From: Magallana gigas
Taxonomy: Eukaryota
Assembly (NCBI RefSeq): GCF_963853765.1
Contig: NC_088857.1
Span: 36,704,001 to 36,768,000, forward strand
DNA: 64,000 bases
Direction of reading: 5' to 3'
The translations under genes and the position numbers were made by a program. Below the pieces are notes generated by a model. The model saw nothing but the letters and a program-made list of their open reading frames with translations. It ran no database searches and was not told the origin of the DNA. Shown here piece by piece: positions 37,797-48,569 of the stretch; within the stretch, counting starts at the first letter, position 1; every line of letters starts with the position of its first letter.

Positions 37797-37950
37797 NNNN
37801 NNNNNNNNNNNNNNNNNNNNNNNNNNNNNNNNNNNNNNNNNNNNNNNNNNNNNNNNNNNNNNNNNNNNNNNNNNNNNNNNNNNNNNNNNNNNNNNNNNNN
37901 NNNNNNNNNNNNNNNNNNNNNNNNNNNNNNNNNNNNNNNNNNNNNNNNNN
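37797..37950. other. Assembly gap (N run)
   Basis: Directly visible. The equivalent interval in copy B is 54341-54396. Confidence 1.
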
Positions 37951-38183
37951 TGTGAAAAAATTCCAAATCCGTCGTTAGCGTTATATCGGAATTTGAAAGT
38001 GTACATTTATCGTTTTGACCCTTTACTTACAATTTTAGAGTTTCCGATGGTAAGAAAACTAGCAGACTACCCCAAAAAAAAAAAAATGATTTCGATATCG
38101 AAAACTAAAGTCATCGGTGTGATATGTAAGAAAATTTTGTCTGAACTGTAAAAAATATTTTACAACAAACATTTCTCATAATC

Positions 38184-40980
38184 ATGTATACACATGGTAA
38201 ACGTCTGAATTTGTTAACAGGTATCTTATGTATGGTACTGGTTGTAATGATTGCTATATCAGAAAGCGAATCTATGTCTCTTAATGAGCATAGCTCGGAT
38301 GATGAAATTGAGGACGAGGTAAGTTTTTTTGTTATATACATTGTGTACATTTACAAATTGCCGAACCATCCACTATAAATATTTATGACGTTTTACTTAA
38401 ACACAACTTTGTCCTTGTAGAATGTAGATTCTGTATTTTATAAATTGAATATGATGTACTGCATTTGAAATATGAAAATGATCATCATTATTACAAACAA
38501 TACCTACAGTACCTATCAGACCCAACCTAACAGAAAGTAAACCCCAACTAAACCCTGGGTTTACTTTCTGGGTTTACTTCGGGTTTACTAGAGTGGACCC
38601 AGAGTAAACCCAAAGTAAACCCAGAGTGGACACAGAGAGTAAACCCAGTCAGAAGTATACCCCTGAAAGCAGACGTTAACTGTGTATTCGGAATATATAA
38701 AGGGTAGGAATTACAGGCAGTAGAATGGTAAGATAAAATACTATAGTCTGCTTCACACTTCAGTGCATACAGTTGACCTCAAAAGCAATTTCAAAGTAAA
38801 CCCAAAGTAAACCCCGAGTAAACCCAAAGTAAACCCCGAGTGGACCCAAATTTTCAAAAAGTAAACCCAAAGTAAACCCAAAAAGTAAACCCGGGGTTTA
38901 GTTGGGGTTTACTCTGGTGTTAGGTTGGGTCTGATCGGTACTGTACAGAGGTCTTTTAGTTTATTTACAGATTGTCGAGAGATTTGAAAGAGGTAAGGTG
39001 TTTGTAAACGTCTATCCGAAAAAATGAGTTGTCTNNNNNNNNNNNNNNNNNNNNNNNNNNNNNNNNNNNNNNNNNNNNNNNNNNNNNNNNNNNNNNNNNN
39101 NNNNNNNNNNNNNNNNNNNNNNNNNNNNNNNNNNNNNNNNNNNNNNNNNNNNNNNNNNNNNNNNNNNNNNNNNGGTAAGGACCACGAACATCACAAAAAA
39201 CATCACCATAAGCATGACAAGAATAAGAAAAATCACCACAAACCAAAGAATGGCACTGTGTCTGACAATTCAAATAAGGTAAAACAAAAATATCAATCAA
39301 TTAAATTGAATTGTAAAAATGCAAGCTACAGTTTTCTCATTTACGTTTTCACTATTGCAAAATGAATGCAAGAAATGGCCATGTGAAAAGACGATATAAT
39401 GAAGTCTTTGTTGGGAGGCCACTATACTCTGTCCAGAGTTTTTGCTTCCACCACTTTTTGCTTGATATTTCAATAATAGTAAATACCTTTGTGCTCAAAC
39501 TACGTTCATCCACTAATATGAAAAATGTCCAGATTATCTGTTTTCAAACGTCCCCTCTACCGCCTCAGATTTCAATACACATTCCAAAATTGAAAGTCTA
39601 CGGAGATTTTGCATTGCAACAGCCATTAATAAGCCCGGATGATAACGTTAAAAAATTGCGCGATGTATTCCGAGTGTATTCCGAATGGAAAAAAGATGTA
39701 AACATTTCCCATTATAAATCTCTGTAAGAAAATTGTTTTTGTTCCTGTGAAATTTCATGAGTGAAAATATATAGTAAAAAAATAACAATTATATTTCACA
39801 TGATGTTATTGGCAGTAAATAATATATTCGGATGCCAAAGAATAAAATGCAAACTGTCCTCTTCTAAAAGATTTTCTTTCCAACACTACGTGTATAGACA
39901 GAATCCATGTACGCAAACAAGAAGACTGACGTAAATGAGAAGGCTAAAGTGACCGGAATGAAGTCGCAAAAGCCAGGCAAGCACGCCCATGTGAAGGCCG
40001 TAGAGGTGGCGGACGAGGGGTCCAAGACGGGGGTGATCGTCGCTGTCGTTCTCGTCCTCATCACAGTTCTCGGGGTCGGCGCGGCGGTGTTTATTGTAGT
40101 AAGAGTTTTCTTCCCTTCCCGAACTCTCGCTTATAATATTTTTTTTTCATGTGCATCAGTCAAATATCAAATGTGCTTTTTTAGAACTTATAGGCTAAAG
40201 TAATTGTAGCAATGCATTTGAAAAAAACCATGAATTTCAAAGTTCGTTATGAATGTACATCAACATTTTTTATCATGGGGACACTTTACGAACTTCGAAA
40301 AATATGTATGAATAAAAAATTCTGGGTTTTAATTGGTTGATAAAATAATTTCTAAACACTGATAAGTATGATTTATGGGGAGGAGGGCAGCTAATGGTAC
40401 AGTAAAAAGATCAAAATATAGTGGGATAGTTGACGGCTAAGCGATGCGGTTCATATCCTGTTTGCCGATGATATAAATCTGGAGAGATGGTCTTGTAAAT
40501 TGTTGAACTACGCGTGAGCTTATAGGAGGAAAGTTCTTAATCGAGAAACTGTTTTTAAAGTAAACTAAAAATCCCTTTGGTTATCTGTTTAATTTATCCC
40601 ATCTAGCTAAACAAGGTTTATTGTATTTAAAGTCCATTATTTCTACCAAACTCTGCACATTTTTGTAAAGTGCGTTAATATCAACGATATCTCAATGGAC
40701 AGCTACAAGGTAGACGGGGTGCAAGACAATATGAGATTTACTGGACTCGTAATATAATGATATTATAATTTACGATACAAGCCATTACCTCACAAAAATG
40801 TATCAATTTACAATATACGTCCAGCCTAATGTTAATACGACACATAATTACTTTTTTTGTAGTGATCAGAATTATCTAATATGTACATTAAAGTTTCATC
40901 CAGCTTGCATGTTGCATGTACTCATATGGACTTTTGTTTTATTTCTACAGAAAAAGAAAAGAGCTCAAGGAAAATCCTAA
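38184..40980 (+). CDS. Orphan His/Lys-rich type I membrane protein, 5 exons, ~165 aa
   Basis: Exons 38184-38318, 38971-38992 (22 nt), ~39169-39278 (acceptor hidden in the gap, visible in copy B), 39898-40098 and 40951-40980, with matching phases. Layout: signal-like [28 protein letters not shown], acidic SSDDEIEDE, His/Lys run, NGT sequon, [25 protein letters not shown], tail KKKRAQGKS*. Confidence 0.8.
38507..38943. mobile_element. Tc1/mariner-type MITE (CAGTACC TIR, TA TSD, GTAAACCC subrepeats) in intron 1 of the His-rich gene
   Basis: TIR CAGTACCTATCAGACCCAACCTAACA / TGTTAGGTTGGGTCTGATCGGTACTG, TA on both sides. The empty site CCTACAGAG is seen in copy B at ~54944. Confidence 0.9.
39035..39173. 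other. Assembly gap (N run) hiding the exon-3 acceptor
   Basis: Directly visible. The equivalent interval in copy B is 55037-55093. Confidence 1.
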
Positions 40981-42274
40981 CTCAGCATCCAGTGGTCTGT
41001 TCTGATGTTTTTTTTTTGTTTTTTTTTACAGTTGTGTTAACTCTATGGAATAAACATTTTACGAAATAGATATTAAAGTCTTTTGGATTTCTTTTGTTGT
41101 TTCTAAAATTAAAACAAGGTACGTACACATTGCTAAGAAAAAATATCTATTTGTAAGCTGTTCATATTCACGAGTCGAAGTATTCTCTTAATCATTTTTG
41201 TACATAAAATTTAAAAGAAAAGAAATATATAATAACTATATTTTTAACAAAACAAGAAAAAAAAATAAAACAGTATTTGCATCTGTATTCGAAATTAGGT
41301 TGTTCATGTTTACCTGAGGTGAATAAAACAATTTTGATTAATCTTAAATTAATATATTAGATACTATAGTTTAAATCTATTACCAGAACGACAACTAAAC
41401 TCACGGTAATCACTTACATGTAACTGAACTTTTTGCACTTGAAACTTTGTTGCCCAGTGTAAAAAAATTTCAAAATGTGTACGTTTACTTAAAAAATATG
41501 AATTTTATATTATAGTGTTTTAAAAGCAGTATACCTTCCCTAAATTTAAATGTTAACTTAAGGGATCGATTTATTTGGAATCTTTTTTTTTATCATTATG
41601 AAGAGTATTCGGTTTAAAATCATGTTATAAAAAATTTACAGATTAAACTTTTAATTACCAGTTATAGATGAATTTTATTTAAATTGATAATTCAAGAAGG
41701 TAGTTTTTATGGGTTTGTACACTGTTTTAGTACTGAAGCACACAGAATATTGGTAGGAGTTGGCTTTTGGCTTTATAGAAAAACCTGCCGGCTTCTGAAA
41801 ATTTGTAATTGGGTTCTGTATTTGGTTTCCTCATTGTATTTCCGATGTTGCTTTTGTGGAAAAACCGGCATTTTGAAAATGTTACATTATTAAATCATTC
41901 CGATTTAACCTGGCATTAGGTCGACACTAGAAAAAAAAATGTAACTGGCCTCTAAACTAGTGCAAGTAAGTGATTTGTTAATCAACCTGTCATTTCTATC
42001 TTTTAATAGTTTTTACCACATCTTTTTATTCAGCCCTTTTAAAAAGTCATTGCTATAGTAAGTAAACATATCATAATACATGTGTAAACATATCTGACTG
42101 CTCATTGAAAAAGACAAAAAGATGAAAGACAAAGAGGAGATGAAGGTCGTGCACAGCGAAGAAACGTTACGTCAGAGGAAACAGGATAAACTACAGCGTC
42201 AAGTGGACCAACACGAGGGAAAGCTACTGTCGAATAACCACCAGAGACTCCACACGTCCAAGCATGTCAACGAG

Positions 42275-43426
42275 TAGCTGCAGATCTGTAGCTCTCTGGT
42301 TGAAAAAATTTGGATAGACAAACCAGAGAGCTACAGTTCCAAGCGTTGTAAAAACCTCCGATTTACGCCGCCGTTTTTGTGTCGCTCGCTTCGGGAATTA
42401 TATCCGACTTTAAAAGCATTCAACCGCCTAAAAAATTGGATTTATTAATTAAACATATAGTTTACCCTAACTCTGCTAACTTTGTTTTCCTTTCAATGGT
42501 TCACAACGGCCATCCTTCGCCTTGGAATGTCATCGTTTTAAAAAACTCGCCTTATGACAACCATGTTTACCTAGTAGCGAGATCTCGGGTGCGTCAACTT
42601 ACCCAAATGGACCCAAATGAACCCAAATGCACCCAAATGGCGATTAAAGTGGAAAACAATTATAATAAAGTCCTTATTACTAATATCATCACTTGTTTTA
42701 GTCATTTCATGGGGTTGTTAGCCGTTATTAAGAAAAATAAAGACCCAAATGGCGATTCAAGCGGAAAACAATTATAATAAAATCCTCATAATTTAGGGAA
42801 ATTTGGAAAAATAAAAGCCGAAGGTCCAGAACAATAATTAAAATTTTTTCAGTATATCTTTAAAAATTGTTTTTGAAAAATAAAGATGAGCATTTTATCT
42901 CGATTTTTAAAATTATATAATGTATGTAATTATATTCAAATAATATAAATATATATATTATATAAAAATAAAACAACTTTTTAAAATAATTTTAATTATT
43001 GTTATGGACCTTCGGCTTTTATTTTTTTCCAAATTTCCCTAAATTATGAGGATTTTATTATAATTGATTTCCGCTTGGGTTCATTTGGGTCCATTTGGGT
43101 AAGTTGACGCACCCGAGATCTCGCTACTAGGTAAACATGGTTGTCATAAGGCGAGTGTTTTAAAACGATGACATTCCAAGGCGAAGGATGGCCGTTGTGA
43201 ACCATTGAAAGGAAAACAAAGTTAGCAGAGTTAGGGTAAACTATATGTTTAATTAATAAATCCAATTTTTTAGGCGGTTGAATGCTTTTAAAGTCGGATA
43301 TAATTCCCGAAGCGAGCGACACAAAAACGGCGGCGTAAATCGGAGGTTTTTACAACGCTTGGAACTGTAGCTCTCTGGTTTGTCTATCCGAATTTTTTCA
43401 ACCAGAGAGCTACAGATCTGCAGCTA
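42275..43426. mobile_element. Mutator(MULE)-like foldback element, 1152 bp, 9-bp TSD
   Basis: Ends TAGCTGCAGATCTGTAGCTCTCTGGTTGAAAAAAT... are inverted over several hundred bp around an AT-rich centre. The right arm lacks ~135 bp. Perfect TSD GTCAACGAG at 42266-74 and 43427-35. Confidence 0.9.
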
Positions 43427-44090
43427 GTCAACGAGGTAACAAAACATGTCAAACAAGGTAACAAAGAATGTCATCATTAAGATGACAAAAATTGGCAACC
43501 AGGTAACAAAGCATGTCAACAAAGGTAACAGAGCATATCAACAACGTAACAAAGAATGTCAACCAGGTAACAAAACATGTCATCAAGGAAACAGAACATG
43601 TCAACAACGTTACAAAGAATGTCAGCCTGTGACTCAACCAGATAGCAAAGAATCTCAAGCAACAAACATGCCGACAAGGTACATGTAACAAAGCATGTCA
43701 ACAAGGTTACAAAGCATGGCAACCAGGCAACAAAGCATGTCAACAAGGTAACAAAAAATGTCAATTTTGCAACAAAGAAAGTCAACTAGGTAACAAAGCA
43801 TGTCAACAAGGTAACAAAGAATGCCAACAAGGTTACAAAGAATGCCAACAAGGTTACAAAGTATGGCAACCGGGCAACAAAGCATGTCAACAAGATAACA
43901 AATAAAATTCAATAAGGTAACAAAGATTTAACAACTTCTATCAACAAATTAACAATGGTAACAAAAATTGTCAACATGAACAAGAAAAAAATGCATGTCA
44001 ACTAGATAACAACATGTAAATTAATATGTAACATAGAATGTCAACAAGGTAACATGCTTCATCATAGTAACAAAGTATCAACAAGGTTGG
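43427..44090. repeat. 21-bp minisatellite (GTAACAAAGCATGTCAACAAG), ~30 diverged units
   Basis: Directly visible periodicity. It translates as a VTKHVNK heptad in one frame. Confidence 0.9.
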
Positions 44091-46893: not shown

Positions 46894-48569
46894 TTAATCC
46901 CCTCCAAGACCCTAACAGCGGATATTAATATTCGACTACAAGATGACTCGGCGAAGGACAGTTCCGTAATGGCATTCGTAGCGGTCGGGATTCTCATTGG
47001 ACATTTGTTGGCTATCCTGGCCATTATGTAAGTAACCGTACATTATAAACCTTTTCCGGAAAATAAATTTCATTTTGAGTTCCCTTTCCCCCCCGGAATT
47101 TACATTTTATTTTTCTGTACCGCAGAATTTGTCGGTGTTATAAAGCAAGAGTAAGTATTCGTTTGATTGCTTTGATCGTTAAGTGCATGTAGTTGTTATG
47201 TTATTGTATTTTATTTGAGCATGCGTTTATTGAAATACACTTTATTTGTTTTGCTTGAAAATTAGGATAAAAAGAAAACTTGTTTAACAATTACAATCGT
47301 TTCGTTTATTGAATTTGATTAACACTGCAAACCACCCTAATACATTAACAACATGACAGGAGAAAAACCATAATCATGTTTTAATTGAATTTGAATTTTA
47401 AGTCGGACATTGATAGAGATGGACAGAAATCTGTAGACGCTGACAGAAAGGGGCATAAACAAGAAAAGACAAATGAAGGAGTTGACAGATCCCTTTCCAA
47501 CCACTCCCGGAAGTGACGACCTTTGTCAACAGTCAGGGTCAACGGAGCGACAAGCACCAGCCAAAGAAACCTCCTGACCCCCCAGAAATCTCTGATATCT
47601 ACACCACTGACCAGTGAGAAACAAAACCAGACGTCGCGCCTCTCCTTAGAGCCCCCACTTCCAGTGTTTAAATCTACAACAGGACAGATATCCCATCTCT
47701 CTATGAACTCCGCACCAGCAGTGTTTAGATCCGTCCCTGACAAACGGTTCAAGCTTTCCCGTATGTCTATAAATTCCGCACCACCAACCTTTGGATCAAC
47801 AAAGAACCAAACGTTAGGTCTGTCTTCAAATCCCCCAGTCAAAGTGGATGGATCCAAGCAAGACCAGATTTCCTTCATATCAATGAAATCGGTACCATCA
47901 GACCTTAGATCCGCCCCAGTGAAACAGAAACAAATATCCCATCTCTCCATTAAGTCCGCGCCTCCCGCTTTGGATTCCGCACAGGGTCAGCTTTCTCGGC
48001 TCTCTATGAAATCAGCTTCTACTGCCGTTAGGTCGACCCAAGAGAAACAAATTCAAACTTTCTGTCTTTCATTGATACGCGAAATGTCAAACGCTCAACA
48101 AAATAAAGCTGTGGAATCTAAAGAGTTGGTCAGGTCCAACACTCGTATAGGTTTACTGCAAGAAAAACAACTGCCTTCCCGCCTGTCTTTAAGGTCTGCA
48201 CCACCAGCTGCAAACCACGCGAATAATGTGATATACGATGTAAAGGAGACATCCTCGCATCCTGAAAATATATTTTTATTGAACAACAAGGGTAAGCCTC
48301 GCAGTGTGACGTCACGGCACGTTGAATTAAAACCATCTTTTCGGCTAACGTCGAAATTTACGAACCTTAACGATCCAATGGTTTCAGTTCATGAAGGTGC
48401 AACAACTGGACAGAGATCGGACGGTTCGGTACATACCGGTATCCATTCGATACCATCGGTACCAGAGAATAACAACTCCACTGCTGATGACACGAGGGCC
48501 TTGGGGGTACTCCCTGCACCCCCGTACCTGACGGGCATCCATCAGTTCAGGAGAGACAGTGGGTGGTGA
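46894..48569 (+). pseudogene. Orphan single-pass membrane protein gene (5' end unresolved) with an in-frame TGA before a 350-codon Ser/Pro-rich tail; pseudogene or readthrough gene
   Basis: Exons 46894-47027 (TM VMAFVAVGILIGHLLAILAII), 47126-47150 (ICRCYKAR) and 47403-48569, with matching phases. TGA at 47514-47516 lies in frame with the 348-aa ORF 47523-48569. Confidence 0.6.

What the first reader, a model, noticed from the sequence alone, without database searches (positions are those of the whole stretch)
38184..40980. Orphan surface protein: acidic pro-like segment, His/Lys block, TM anchor
Seen: five phase-compatible exons give ~165 aa. These comprise a signal-like N-terminus, acidic [16 protein letters not shown], a 25-residue stretch with 9 His and 9 Lys ([25 protein letters not shown]), an NGT sequon, one TM helix and a 9-aa basic tail. 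I recognise no family. Inference: an acidic piece followed by a cationic His-rich piece resembles a charge-neutralised precursor. It could be a membrane-tethered Zn/Cu-binding, pH-switchable antimicrobial, adhesive or biomineralisation protein, possibly released by cleavage after ERFER.
Basis: partly seen in the sequence, partly recalled or inferred. Interest (0 to 1): 0.7.

Follow-up and report, generated by a model that had tools for sequence, protein, structure and literature searches.

The report
Oyster-only His/Lys-rich membrane protein gene
This is a real, spliced Pacific-oyster gene (LOC105321313) for a small one-pass membrane protein with a histidine/lysine-rich outer part; it occurs only in oysters, has no known function, and is cited in the literature as a testis "non-coding RNA".

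Summary
They also bridge the assembly gap in frame: the acceptor of the His/Lys exon and 5 exonic letters (two residues) lie inside the gap.

The gene therefore has 6 exons and encodes 166-179 aa.

The genome is Magallana gigas and the gene is LOC105321313, annotated "uncharacterized protein". Orthologs with the same 6-exon layout exist only in oysters (Crassostrea, Saccostrea, Ostrea). No Pfam, PDB or Atlas family fits.

- **Conserved across the family:** a hydrophobic N-terminus, a dibasic RX(K/E)R site in a 22-nt micro-exon, a His/Lys-rich block, an N-glycosylation sequon, a [14 protein letters not shown] motif, a TM helix and a basic tail.
- **Not conserved:** the acidic piece. Net charge is -9 only in Magallana, so "charge-neutralised precursor" is lineage-specific at best.

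Two papers cite the gene as a gonad-specific "lncRNA" that rises during spermatogenesis. This points to a sperm or testis surface role rather than shell or immunity. Function remains inferred.

The parts
37189..37237 (+). Alternative upstream coding 5' exon (MWDKQPKPPKFGTNVAG...) of NCBI isoform X2. It is spliced to the acceptor at 38221. Coordinates are approximate.
   Evidence: P0037 and P0028 sequences; tblastn to the window.
38047..38125 (+). Exon 1a. Start codon is ATG 38086 (P0001, 166 aa) or the in-frame ATG 38047 (NCBI isoform X1, 179 aa). The donor follows 38125. The 5' end of the exon is not determined.
   Evidence: X1 joint re-read as 38125|38221. L004 mapping. P0032. The 5' flank is orthologous to exon 1 of other oysters.
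38126..38220 (+). Intron 1 (95 nt, GT..AG).
38221..38318 (+). Exon 2: the rest of the hydrophobic N-terminal segment ([13 protein letters not shown]) and the acidic piece ([19 protein letters not shown]).
38511..38948 (.). MITE-like insertion with inverted-repeat arms, inside intron 2. It is absent from the paralog copy.
   Evidence: High contig depth from many loci.
38971..38992 (+). Micro-exon 3 (22 nt, ends in phase 1). It encodes IVERFER, the conserved RX(K/E)R candidate convertase site.
   Evidence: Joints. The same 22-25-nt exon is present in three other oyster genera.
39035..39173 (+). Assembly gap. It hides the 3' part of intron 3, the acceptor, and the first 5 letters of exon 4. The letters were not filled in.
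   Evidence: tables 5 and 5c. L004 has 5 letters between the two flanks.
39174..39278 (+). Visible part of exon 4: the His/Lys block (9 His, 9 Lys in 25 residues), the NGT sequon and SDNSNK.
39898..40098 (+). Exon 5: the conserved juxtamembrane motif ([18 protein letters not shown]), [10 protein letters not shown], and the TM helix [22 protein letters not shown].
40951..41054 (+). Exon 6: the tail KKKRAQGKS, stop TAA at 40978-40980, and the 3' UTR up to the AATAAA at 41049-41054.
   Evidence: Joint 40098|40951; sequence; L004.
54528..55201 (+). Exons 1-4 of a tandem paralog (copy B, 93-98% identical DNA). Its exons 5-6 lie outside the window at G000:C5:36774480-36774662 and about 36775975-36776001. 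Joined, they give an intact 160-aa ORF.

Best explanation
Shown:
- A transcribed, six-exon protein-coding gene of Magallana gigas (LOC105321313).
- It encodes a 166-179-aa protein with an N-terminal hydrophobic segment, a roughly 105-residue charged ectodomain predicted to be disordered, one C-terminal TM helix and a 9-residue basic cytoplasmic tail.
- The family is restricted to true oysters. It keeps the exon layout and its position just downstream of the PRL phosphatase gene.

Inferred:
- The N-terminal segment is a cleaved signal peptide (AIS|ES fits the -3/-1 rule), giving a type I surface protein.
- A furin-type convertase cuts at the conserved RX(K/E)R in the secretory pathway and removes a short N-terminal piece.
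- This exposes a membrane-tethered, glycosylated His/Lys-rich tip. Its net charge rises from about +9 to about +20 when the histidines protonate. It therefore works as a pH- and Zn/Cu-sensitive binder of polyanions (sulfated glycans, acidic surfaces).
- The conserved [14 protein letters not shown] motif and the small-xxx-small TM face mediate partner contacts.
- Because cited RNA-seq places expression in male gonad, rising during spermatogenesis, the most likely site of action is the surface of male germ cells or sperm.
For: Transcription and splicing.

Identity: P0032 lies on a contig of 57,274,926 bases, the same length as the window's contig.

Orthologs in C. virginica, S. echinata, S. cucullata, O. 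edulis and M. angulata.

Coding evidence:
- Same six-exon structure, including the 22-25-nt micro-exon.
- PRL-type phosphatase gene upstream in both Saccostrea and the window.
- The ORF is kept although synonymous sites between genera are saturated. dN is 0.40-0.78, and dN/dS is 0.46 between the two M. gigas copies.

Conserved features:
- Invariant P1 Arg, with KR or RXKR in the orthologs.
- His/Lys block conserved in composition.
- Sequon and motif conserved.

Structure: AF2 gives pLDDT below 50 for residues 30-129 and helices at 4-31 and 131-164. Hydropathy agrees.

Testis association: PMC6529535 and PMC8353863, both citing Yue et al. 2018.
Against: - Cleavage, topology, metal or polyanion binding and protein-level expression are all untested here.
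- In Magallana the site is RFER. The Glu at P2 is poor for furin.
- The N-terminal hydrophobic core is long (18 residues), so it might stay as a signal anchor. Isoform X2 and the M. angulata model put 17-31 hydrophilic residues in front of it.
- The testis statement is second-hand. The primary paper is not held, and it treated the locus as a lncRNA.
- The runs laid here are contigs with coded metadata, so tissue and expression level could not be checked.
- The most conserved ectodomain part is the juxtamembrane motif, not the His/Lys block, so the block may be secondary.
Confidence: 0.5

Rival explanations
1. TM-partner subunit. The functional core is the invariant juxtamembrane motif plus the TM helix, which dock onto another membrane protein as a small accessory subunit. 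The His/Lys block is only a disordered, fast-evolving spacer.
For: The strongest conservation is in S93-G110 and in the TM helix, which is identical in all Magallana-type copies. The block's positions are not conserved, only its composition. The small-xxx-small face (LGxGA) is conserved.
Against: The His/Lys bias and the dibasic site persist across genera whose synonymous sites are saturated. That would be unexpected for a neutral spacer. No partner is known.
Confidence: 0.2
2. Metal handling. A membrane-anchored Zn/Cu buffer or chaperone of a Zn-rich tissue, binding metal through its clustered histidines.
For: There are 9 His in 25 residues and 5-9 His in every ortholog. That oysters hyper-accumulate Zn and Cu is general knowledge, not tested here.
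Against: No homology to any metal transporter or chaperone. Histidines are interleaved with Lys rather than with Cys, Asp or Glu ligands. No metal-responsive expression is known.
Confidence: 0.15
3. One reading: a host-defence precursor that yields a histatin-like cationic antimicrobial peptide, or an adhesive or biomineralisation protein.
For: The segment is cationic and His-rich and follows a dibasic site. The acidic upstream piece in Magallana has net charge -9.
Against: The cationic part stays TM-anchored after the only conserved cleavage. It has no hydrophobic or aromatic residues. The acidic piece is not conserved. Reported expression is gonadal and spermatogenic, not haemocyte or mantle.
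Confidence: 0.1
4. Non-coding RNA, as in the literature: the transcript acts as a lncRNA and the ORF is incidental.
For: Two papers cite it as "lncRNA LOC105321313". No protein-level evidence was found.
Against: A six-exon ORF with conserved phases, micro-exon, motif and TM helix is kept in four or more oyster genera with saturated dS. NCBI now models it as protein-coding.
Confidence: 0.03

Closest known systems
NCBI gene LOC105321313 (M. gigas) and its orthologs: LOC111104809 (C. virginica), LOC133191140 (S. echinata), LOC134270468 (S. cucullata), LOC125646473 (O. edulis), LOC128160964 (M. angulata)
   Same: This is the gene itself (99-100% identity) and its orthologs (34-49% identity). They share the six-exon layout, and in S. 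echinata, the one ortholog locus where a neighbouring gene was recorded, a PRL-type phosphatase gene lies upstream as in the window.
   Different: All are annotated only as "uncharacterized protein". Older literature treats the M. gigas locus as a lncRNA. UniProt K1PTQ3 and A0A8W8N8T3 are fused mis-models.
His/Gly/Lys-rich domain 5 of high-molecular-weight kininogen, and histidine-rich glycoprotein (recalled from memory, not tested)
   Same: Disordered His+Lys-rich stretches that bind Zn2+ and polyanionic surfaces in a pH-dependent way. This is the mechanism proposed here.
   Different: No detectable homology. Those are soluble vertebrate plasma proteins, whereas this one is membrane-anchored and oyster-specific.
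Histatins and other His-rich cationic peptides
   Same: Cationic, His-rich and metal-binding in composition.
   Different: Histatins are small secreted peptides with aromatic residues and an ATCUN motif. Here there is a TM anchor, no aromatic residues and no X-X-H N-terminus after the predicted cut.
Small type I surface proteins with disordered ectodomains (podoplanin, glycophorin, syndecan, SNORC, TMEM154)
   Same: Overall architecture. These were the nearest Atlas feature hits, at 0.75-0.83.
   Different: Scores are below the 0.9 lead threshold. There are no Pfam matches, few Ser/Thr residues for mucin-type glycans, and no syndecan tail motif.
Precursors with an anionic pro-piece that neutralises a cationic mature part (alpha-defensins, eosinophil major basic protein; from general knowledge)
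   Same: In Magallana, a -9 piece precedes a +7 block, separated by a basic cleavage motif.
   Different: The charge balance is absent in Crassostrea virginica, Saccostrea and Ostrea.

Membership tests
Protein-coding gene (versus lncRNA, the literature label) | An ORF conserved across species, with conserved exon phases | tested here: met
   Six-exon ORFs in four genera, exon lengths 34/71-98/22-25/110-173/198-207/30-72 nt. dS is saturated while the ORF stays intact; dN/dS is 0.46 between the M. gigas copies.
Protein-coding gene (versus lncRNA, the literature label) | Evidence of translation (peptides or ribosome footprints) | not testable with these tools
   No proteome or Ribo-seq resource was available. 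K1PTQ3 and the LOC ids were not found in the text of any proteomics paper.
Type I single-pass membrane protein | N-terminal signal peptide, plus one TM helix near the C-terminus with a basic cytoplasmic tail | tested here: met
   Hydropathy peaks at residues 9-27 and 136-154. AF2 helices at 4-31 and 131-164. The tail is KKKRAQGKS. Signal-peptide cleavage itself is heuristic only (AIS|ES).
Proprotein-convertase-processed precursor | A conserved R-X-(K/R)-R or dibasic motif in an exposed region | tested here: met
   RFER / RFKR / RQKR / LQKR / IQKR at the same alignment column, with P1 Arg invariant. The region is predicted disordered or low-confidence.
Proprotein-convertase-processed precursor | Actual cleavage at the motif | not testable with these tools
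   Needs expression with and without a furin inhibitor, or N-terminal sequencing.
Pfam DUF4064 (PF13273; precomputed label on P0001 and P0032) | Score at or above the gathering threshold (32.1 bits) | tested here: not met
   26.2 bits, over the TM region only, in 3 of 8 family members.
Histatin-like / His-rich antimicrobial peptides | Small soluble secreted peptide; sequence homology | tested here: not met
   A TM anchor is retained after the only conserved cleavage site. No homolog outside oysters was found among 1.84 billion representatives or by profile search.
Testis / spermatogenesis-specific gene | Male-gonad-biased expression | not tested
   Only second-hand statements were found. The runs used here have coded metadata and are contigs.

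The most novel reading that the evidence does not exclude
The testis "hub lncRNA" of Pacific-oyster sex-differentiation studies is in fact a conserved, convertase-activated sperm-surface protein. Its His/Lys-rich tip would bind sulfated egg-coat glycans or Zn in a pH-switchable way. That would make it an oyster-specific gamete-interaction molecule, evolving fast and recently duplicated.
Probability: 0.12. Interest if true: 0.7.

Novelty: new variant of a known kind. Interest (0 to 1): 0.4.

Why it matters
The locus is cited in oyster sex-determination papers as a gonad-specific lncRNA and as a gene rising through spermatogenesis. My recollection of Yue et al. 2018, which I could not check, is that it calls the locus a hub gene of testis development.

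The evidence here shows a conserved membrane protein, so functional work should target the protein rather than the RNA alone: antibodies, sperm-membrane proteomics, knock-down phenotypes.

It also defines an oyster-restricted protein family with a clear, testable architecture: a dibasic site, a His/Lys tip and a conserved juxtamembrane motif. As it stands, this is an uncharacterised lineage-specific gene, not a new principle.

Tried and rejected
Family searches:
- Pfam on the protein and on all eight family members gave only sub-threshold TM or low-complexity hits: DUF4064, RIFIN, Insulin_TMD, SelP_N.
- PDB sequence search gave nothing below E = 0.1.
- ESM Atlas on the whole protein gave only architectural look-alikes at 0.83 or lower. 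On the ectodomain alone it gave no usable hit.
- AF2 produced no fold to search, because the ectodomain is disordered, so no fold search was run.
- The profile search and the exhaustive phmmer search found no relative outside Ostreidae.

Look-ups that led nowhere:
- The look-up of encoding contigs failed for the shorter isoforms P0013 and P0017. The longest isoforms worked.
- The primary paper, Yue et al. 2018, is not held.
- The supplements of PMC8353863 do not contain the LOC id.
- No paper names the ortholog LOC ids, K1PTQ3 or SRR24058833.
- A literature search for a His-rich oyster sperm membrane protein returned nothing relevant.

Readings rejected:
- That the 7-letter identity GGTAAGG on both sides of the gap means the flanks overlap. 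Transcripts splice from 38992 into the gap instead.
- That the AAT-containing contigs come from paralog B. Their exon 2 and exon 5 are A-type, and A-type genomic ORFs with this variant exist.

Full report
**1. What is in the sequence**

- the acidic SSDDEIEDE + IVERFER;
- the block [25 protein letters not shown] (9 His and 9 Lys in 25 residues; chance about 5e-9 and 2e-5);
- NGT;
- a 22-residue hydrophobic helix;
- the tail KKKRAQGKS.

All proposed introns have GT..AG ends.

**2. The gap test (asked for first)**

I searched RNA runs with exon 5. Twenty runs from 13 studies hold all of its sampled words. I then laid the contigs of four runs on 38100-41300.

Joints seen:
- 38318|38971 (X1, X9);
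- 39278|39898 (all four runs);
- 40098|40951 (X8, X2);
- across the gap, 38992 joined to 39180 (X1, X9) or 39176 (X2), with 14 or 7 letters in between (table 5c).

Subtracting the reference letters that those inserts replace, plus a 3-letter allelic insertion in X1 and X9, each contig puts exactly 5 exonic letters inside the gap. An independent mRNA contig (L004, from SRR24058833) also has 5 letters between the two flanks.

Exon 3 is therefore 22 nt (38971-38992, ending in phase 1). The acceptor of exon 4 is hidden in the gap. 22+5+105 = 132 nt keeps the frame.

**3. The 5' end is different from the finding**

- X1 shows a further joint. The tool reports it as 38127>38224 with one letter between. 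Given a SNP at 38223, it reads as a canonical GT..AG intron 38126-38220.
- L004 shows the same splice.
- NCBI isoform X1 also has it (P0032, 179 aa, MVRKLADYPKKKKMISISKTKVIGVIC|ILC...).
- Isoform X2 (P0037) and the M. angulata model (P0028) splice another upstream exon (about 37189-37237) to the same acceptor.

The observed starts are ATG 38086 or ATG 38047. The true transcription start is unknown, because L004 runs co-linearly upstream to 35675, into the 3' UTR region of the neighbouring PRL phosphatase gene. That gene's last coding exon (...CCVM*) ends at 34880. L004 is therefore probably a merged contig.

One oddity remains:
It ranks first of 1,213 ATG-opened 13-mers in the window, and exon 1a ranks 24th.
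- Yet exon 1a has the orthologous 5' flank.
- The stretch is either a relic of an exon duplication or intron loss, or an unseen alternative first exon. Contigs cannot exclude the latter.

If the hydrophobic segment is a cleaved signal peptide, the mature protein is the same either way.

**4. Identity and relatives**

- The window is Magallana (Crassostrea) gigas. P0032 sits on an NCBI contig of 57,274,926 bases, the length of the window's contig. The gene is LOC105321313, annotated "uncharacterized protein".
- An exhaustive phmmer search of 1.84 billion representatives gave 15 hits. A profile search gave 13. The named ones are all from oysters; the unnamed ones are Logan contig ORFs that match single exons of this gene or its close relatives.
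- Full-length orthologs are in C. virginica (49% identity), Saccostrea echinata and S. cucullata, Ostrea edulis and M. angulata. All are uncharacterised.
- Exact spliced mapping shows the same six-exon layout, including the 22-25-nt micro-exon. Ostrea has one extra His/Lys exon.
- In Saccostrea a PRL-type phosphatase gene lies upstream, as in the window.
- Synonymous sites between genera are saturated, yet the ORF is intact. dN is 0.40-0.78. dN/dS is 0.46 between the two M. gigas copies.

This is a protein-coding gene.

No known family fits. Pfam hits are below threshold and TM-driven. PDB gives nothing. The Atlas gives only podoplanin-, glycophorin- and syndecan-like architecture at 0.83 or lower.

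**5. What is conserved**

Conserved:
- the hydrophobic N-terminus;
- a dibasic site at the end of the micro-exon (RFER in Magallana, RFKR, RQKR, LQKR, IQKR elsewhere; P1 Arg invariant);
- a His/Lys-rich block (5-9 His, 11-21 Lys+Arg, net +6 to +14), conserved in composition rather than position;
- N-x-T sequon(s);
- the best-conserved motif, (D/E)S(I/M)YANKKTDVN(Q/E)KAxVxG;
- EVAD..KTG;
- a TM helix with a small-xxx-small face (LGxGA);
- a basic tail.

Not conserved: the acidic piece, with net charge -9 in Magallana but +1, -1 and -2 elsewhere.

AF2 with the family alignment predicts two helices (4-31, 131-164) and pLDDT below 50 for residues 30-129. The ectodomain is therefore predicted to be intrinsically disordered.

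**6. Mechanism**

Shown: the gene, its splicing, the architecture and the conservation.

Inferred:
- signal-peptide cleavage;
- a type I topology with the His/Lys block outside the cell;
- convertase cleavage at RX(K/E)R, which removes the short N-terminal piece and leaves the cationic, glycosylated tip tethered to the membrane;
- a net charge after the site of about +9 at neutral pH and about +20 with protonated histidines, which suits pH- and Zn/Cu-dependent binding of polyanions. Kininogen domain 5 and histidine-rich glycoprotein are known to do this (from memory, no homology).

**7. Expression**

Two papers cite Yue et al. 2018 (Mar Biotechnol 20:206). They list "lncRNA LOC105321313" as gonad-specific and as rising throughout spermatogenesis (PMC6529535, PMC8353863). 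From memory, the primary paper also names it a hub gene of testis development.

I could not read the primary paper, and I could not check tissues in the coded runs. If the statement holds, the site of action is male germ cells or sperm. The shell, mucus and immunity ideas then lose ground.

**8. Surroundings**

- The whole gene region (about 35675-42274) is duplicated.
- Copy B has exons 1-4 at 54528-55201 and exons 5-6 about 15 kb further on, beyond the window.
- Copy B's intron 4 holds a reverse-transcriptase ORF.
- Its joined ORF is intact (160 aa), but it lacks part of the conserved motif.
- No annotated product for copy B was seen.

**9. Verdict**

It is a family-less surface protein with a plausible cleavage site and a conserved His/Lys bias. 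The charge-neutralisation and antimicrobial or biomineral readings are not supported.
- The gene is already annotated but uncharacterised.
- The useful new point is that a literature "lncRNA" of oyster spermatogenesis encodes a conserved membrane protein.

Noticed in passing
window 38126-38220 (and copy B 54568-54662): The 95-nt intron 1 holds an ATG-opened stretch ([13 protein letters not shown]) in frame with exon 2. It resembles the orthologs' exon 1 more than the used exon 1a does. It may be a relic of exon duplication or intron loss, or an unseen alternative first exon.
   Followed up: partly
window 35675-42274 vs 50701-55221, plus G000:C5:36774357-36777077 (L003 6357-9077): Segmental duplication of the whole gene region at 88-98% identity. 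Copy B is split by an insertion of about 15 kb in intron 4.
   Followed up: partly
window 56294-57715 (-): A 473-aa ORF with reverse-transcriptase motifs (non-LTR retrotransposon type by eye), inside the enlarged intron 4 of copy B.
   Followed up: no
window 38511-38948: MITE-like element with 54-nt, 94% complementary arms and internal GTAAACCC repeats, in intron 2 of copy A. It is absent from copy B. Very high RNA-contig depth from many loci.
   Followed up: partly
window 39420-39770: A second dispersed repeat, in intron 4. Contig depth reaches the thousands, with many divergent contigs. There is a weak copy at 18331-18572 (-).
   Followed up: no
window 33733-36200: The last coding exons of a PRL-type phosphatase (ending ...CCVM* at 34880) and a 3' UTR conserved with Saccostrea to about 36200. 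mRNA contig L004 runs unbroken from 35675 into exon 1a of LOC105321313. This suggests read-through or overlapping transcripts.
   Followed up: partly
window 46894-47513: A downstream small membrane-protein gene. UniProt K1PTQ3 and A0A8W8N8T3 wrongly fuse its exons to exon 5 of LOC105321313.
   Followed up: no
window 39175-39188 and 40971: Allelic variation in RNA contigs: a 3-letter insertion after 39179, a G>A change at 39175, an E/K change at the GAA codon 39186-39188, and a 4-letter insertion after 40971 that moves the stop one codon earlier. The last is also the state in copy B.
   Followed up: partly
window 42272-42500 vs 43201-43429: A 229-nt inverted repeat at 99% identity, just downstream of the gene.
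   Followed up: no
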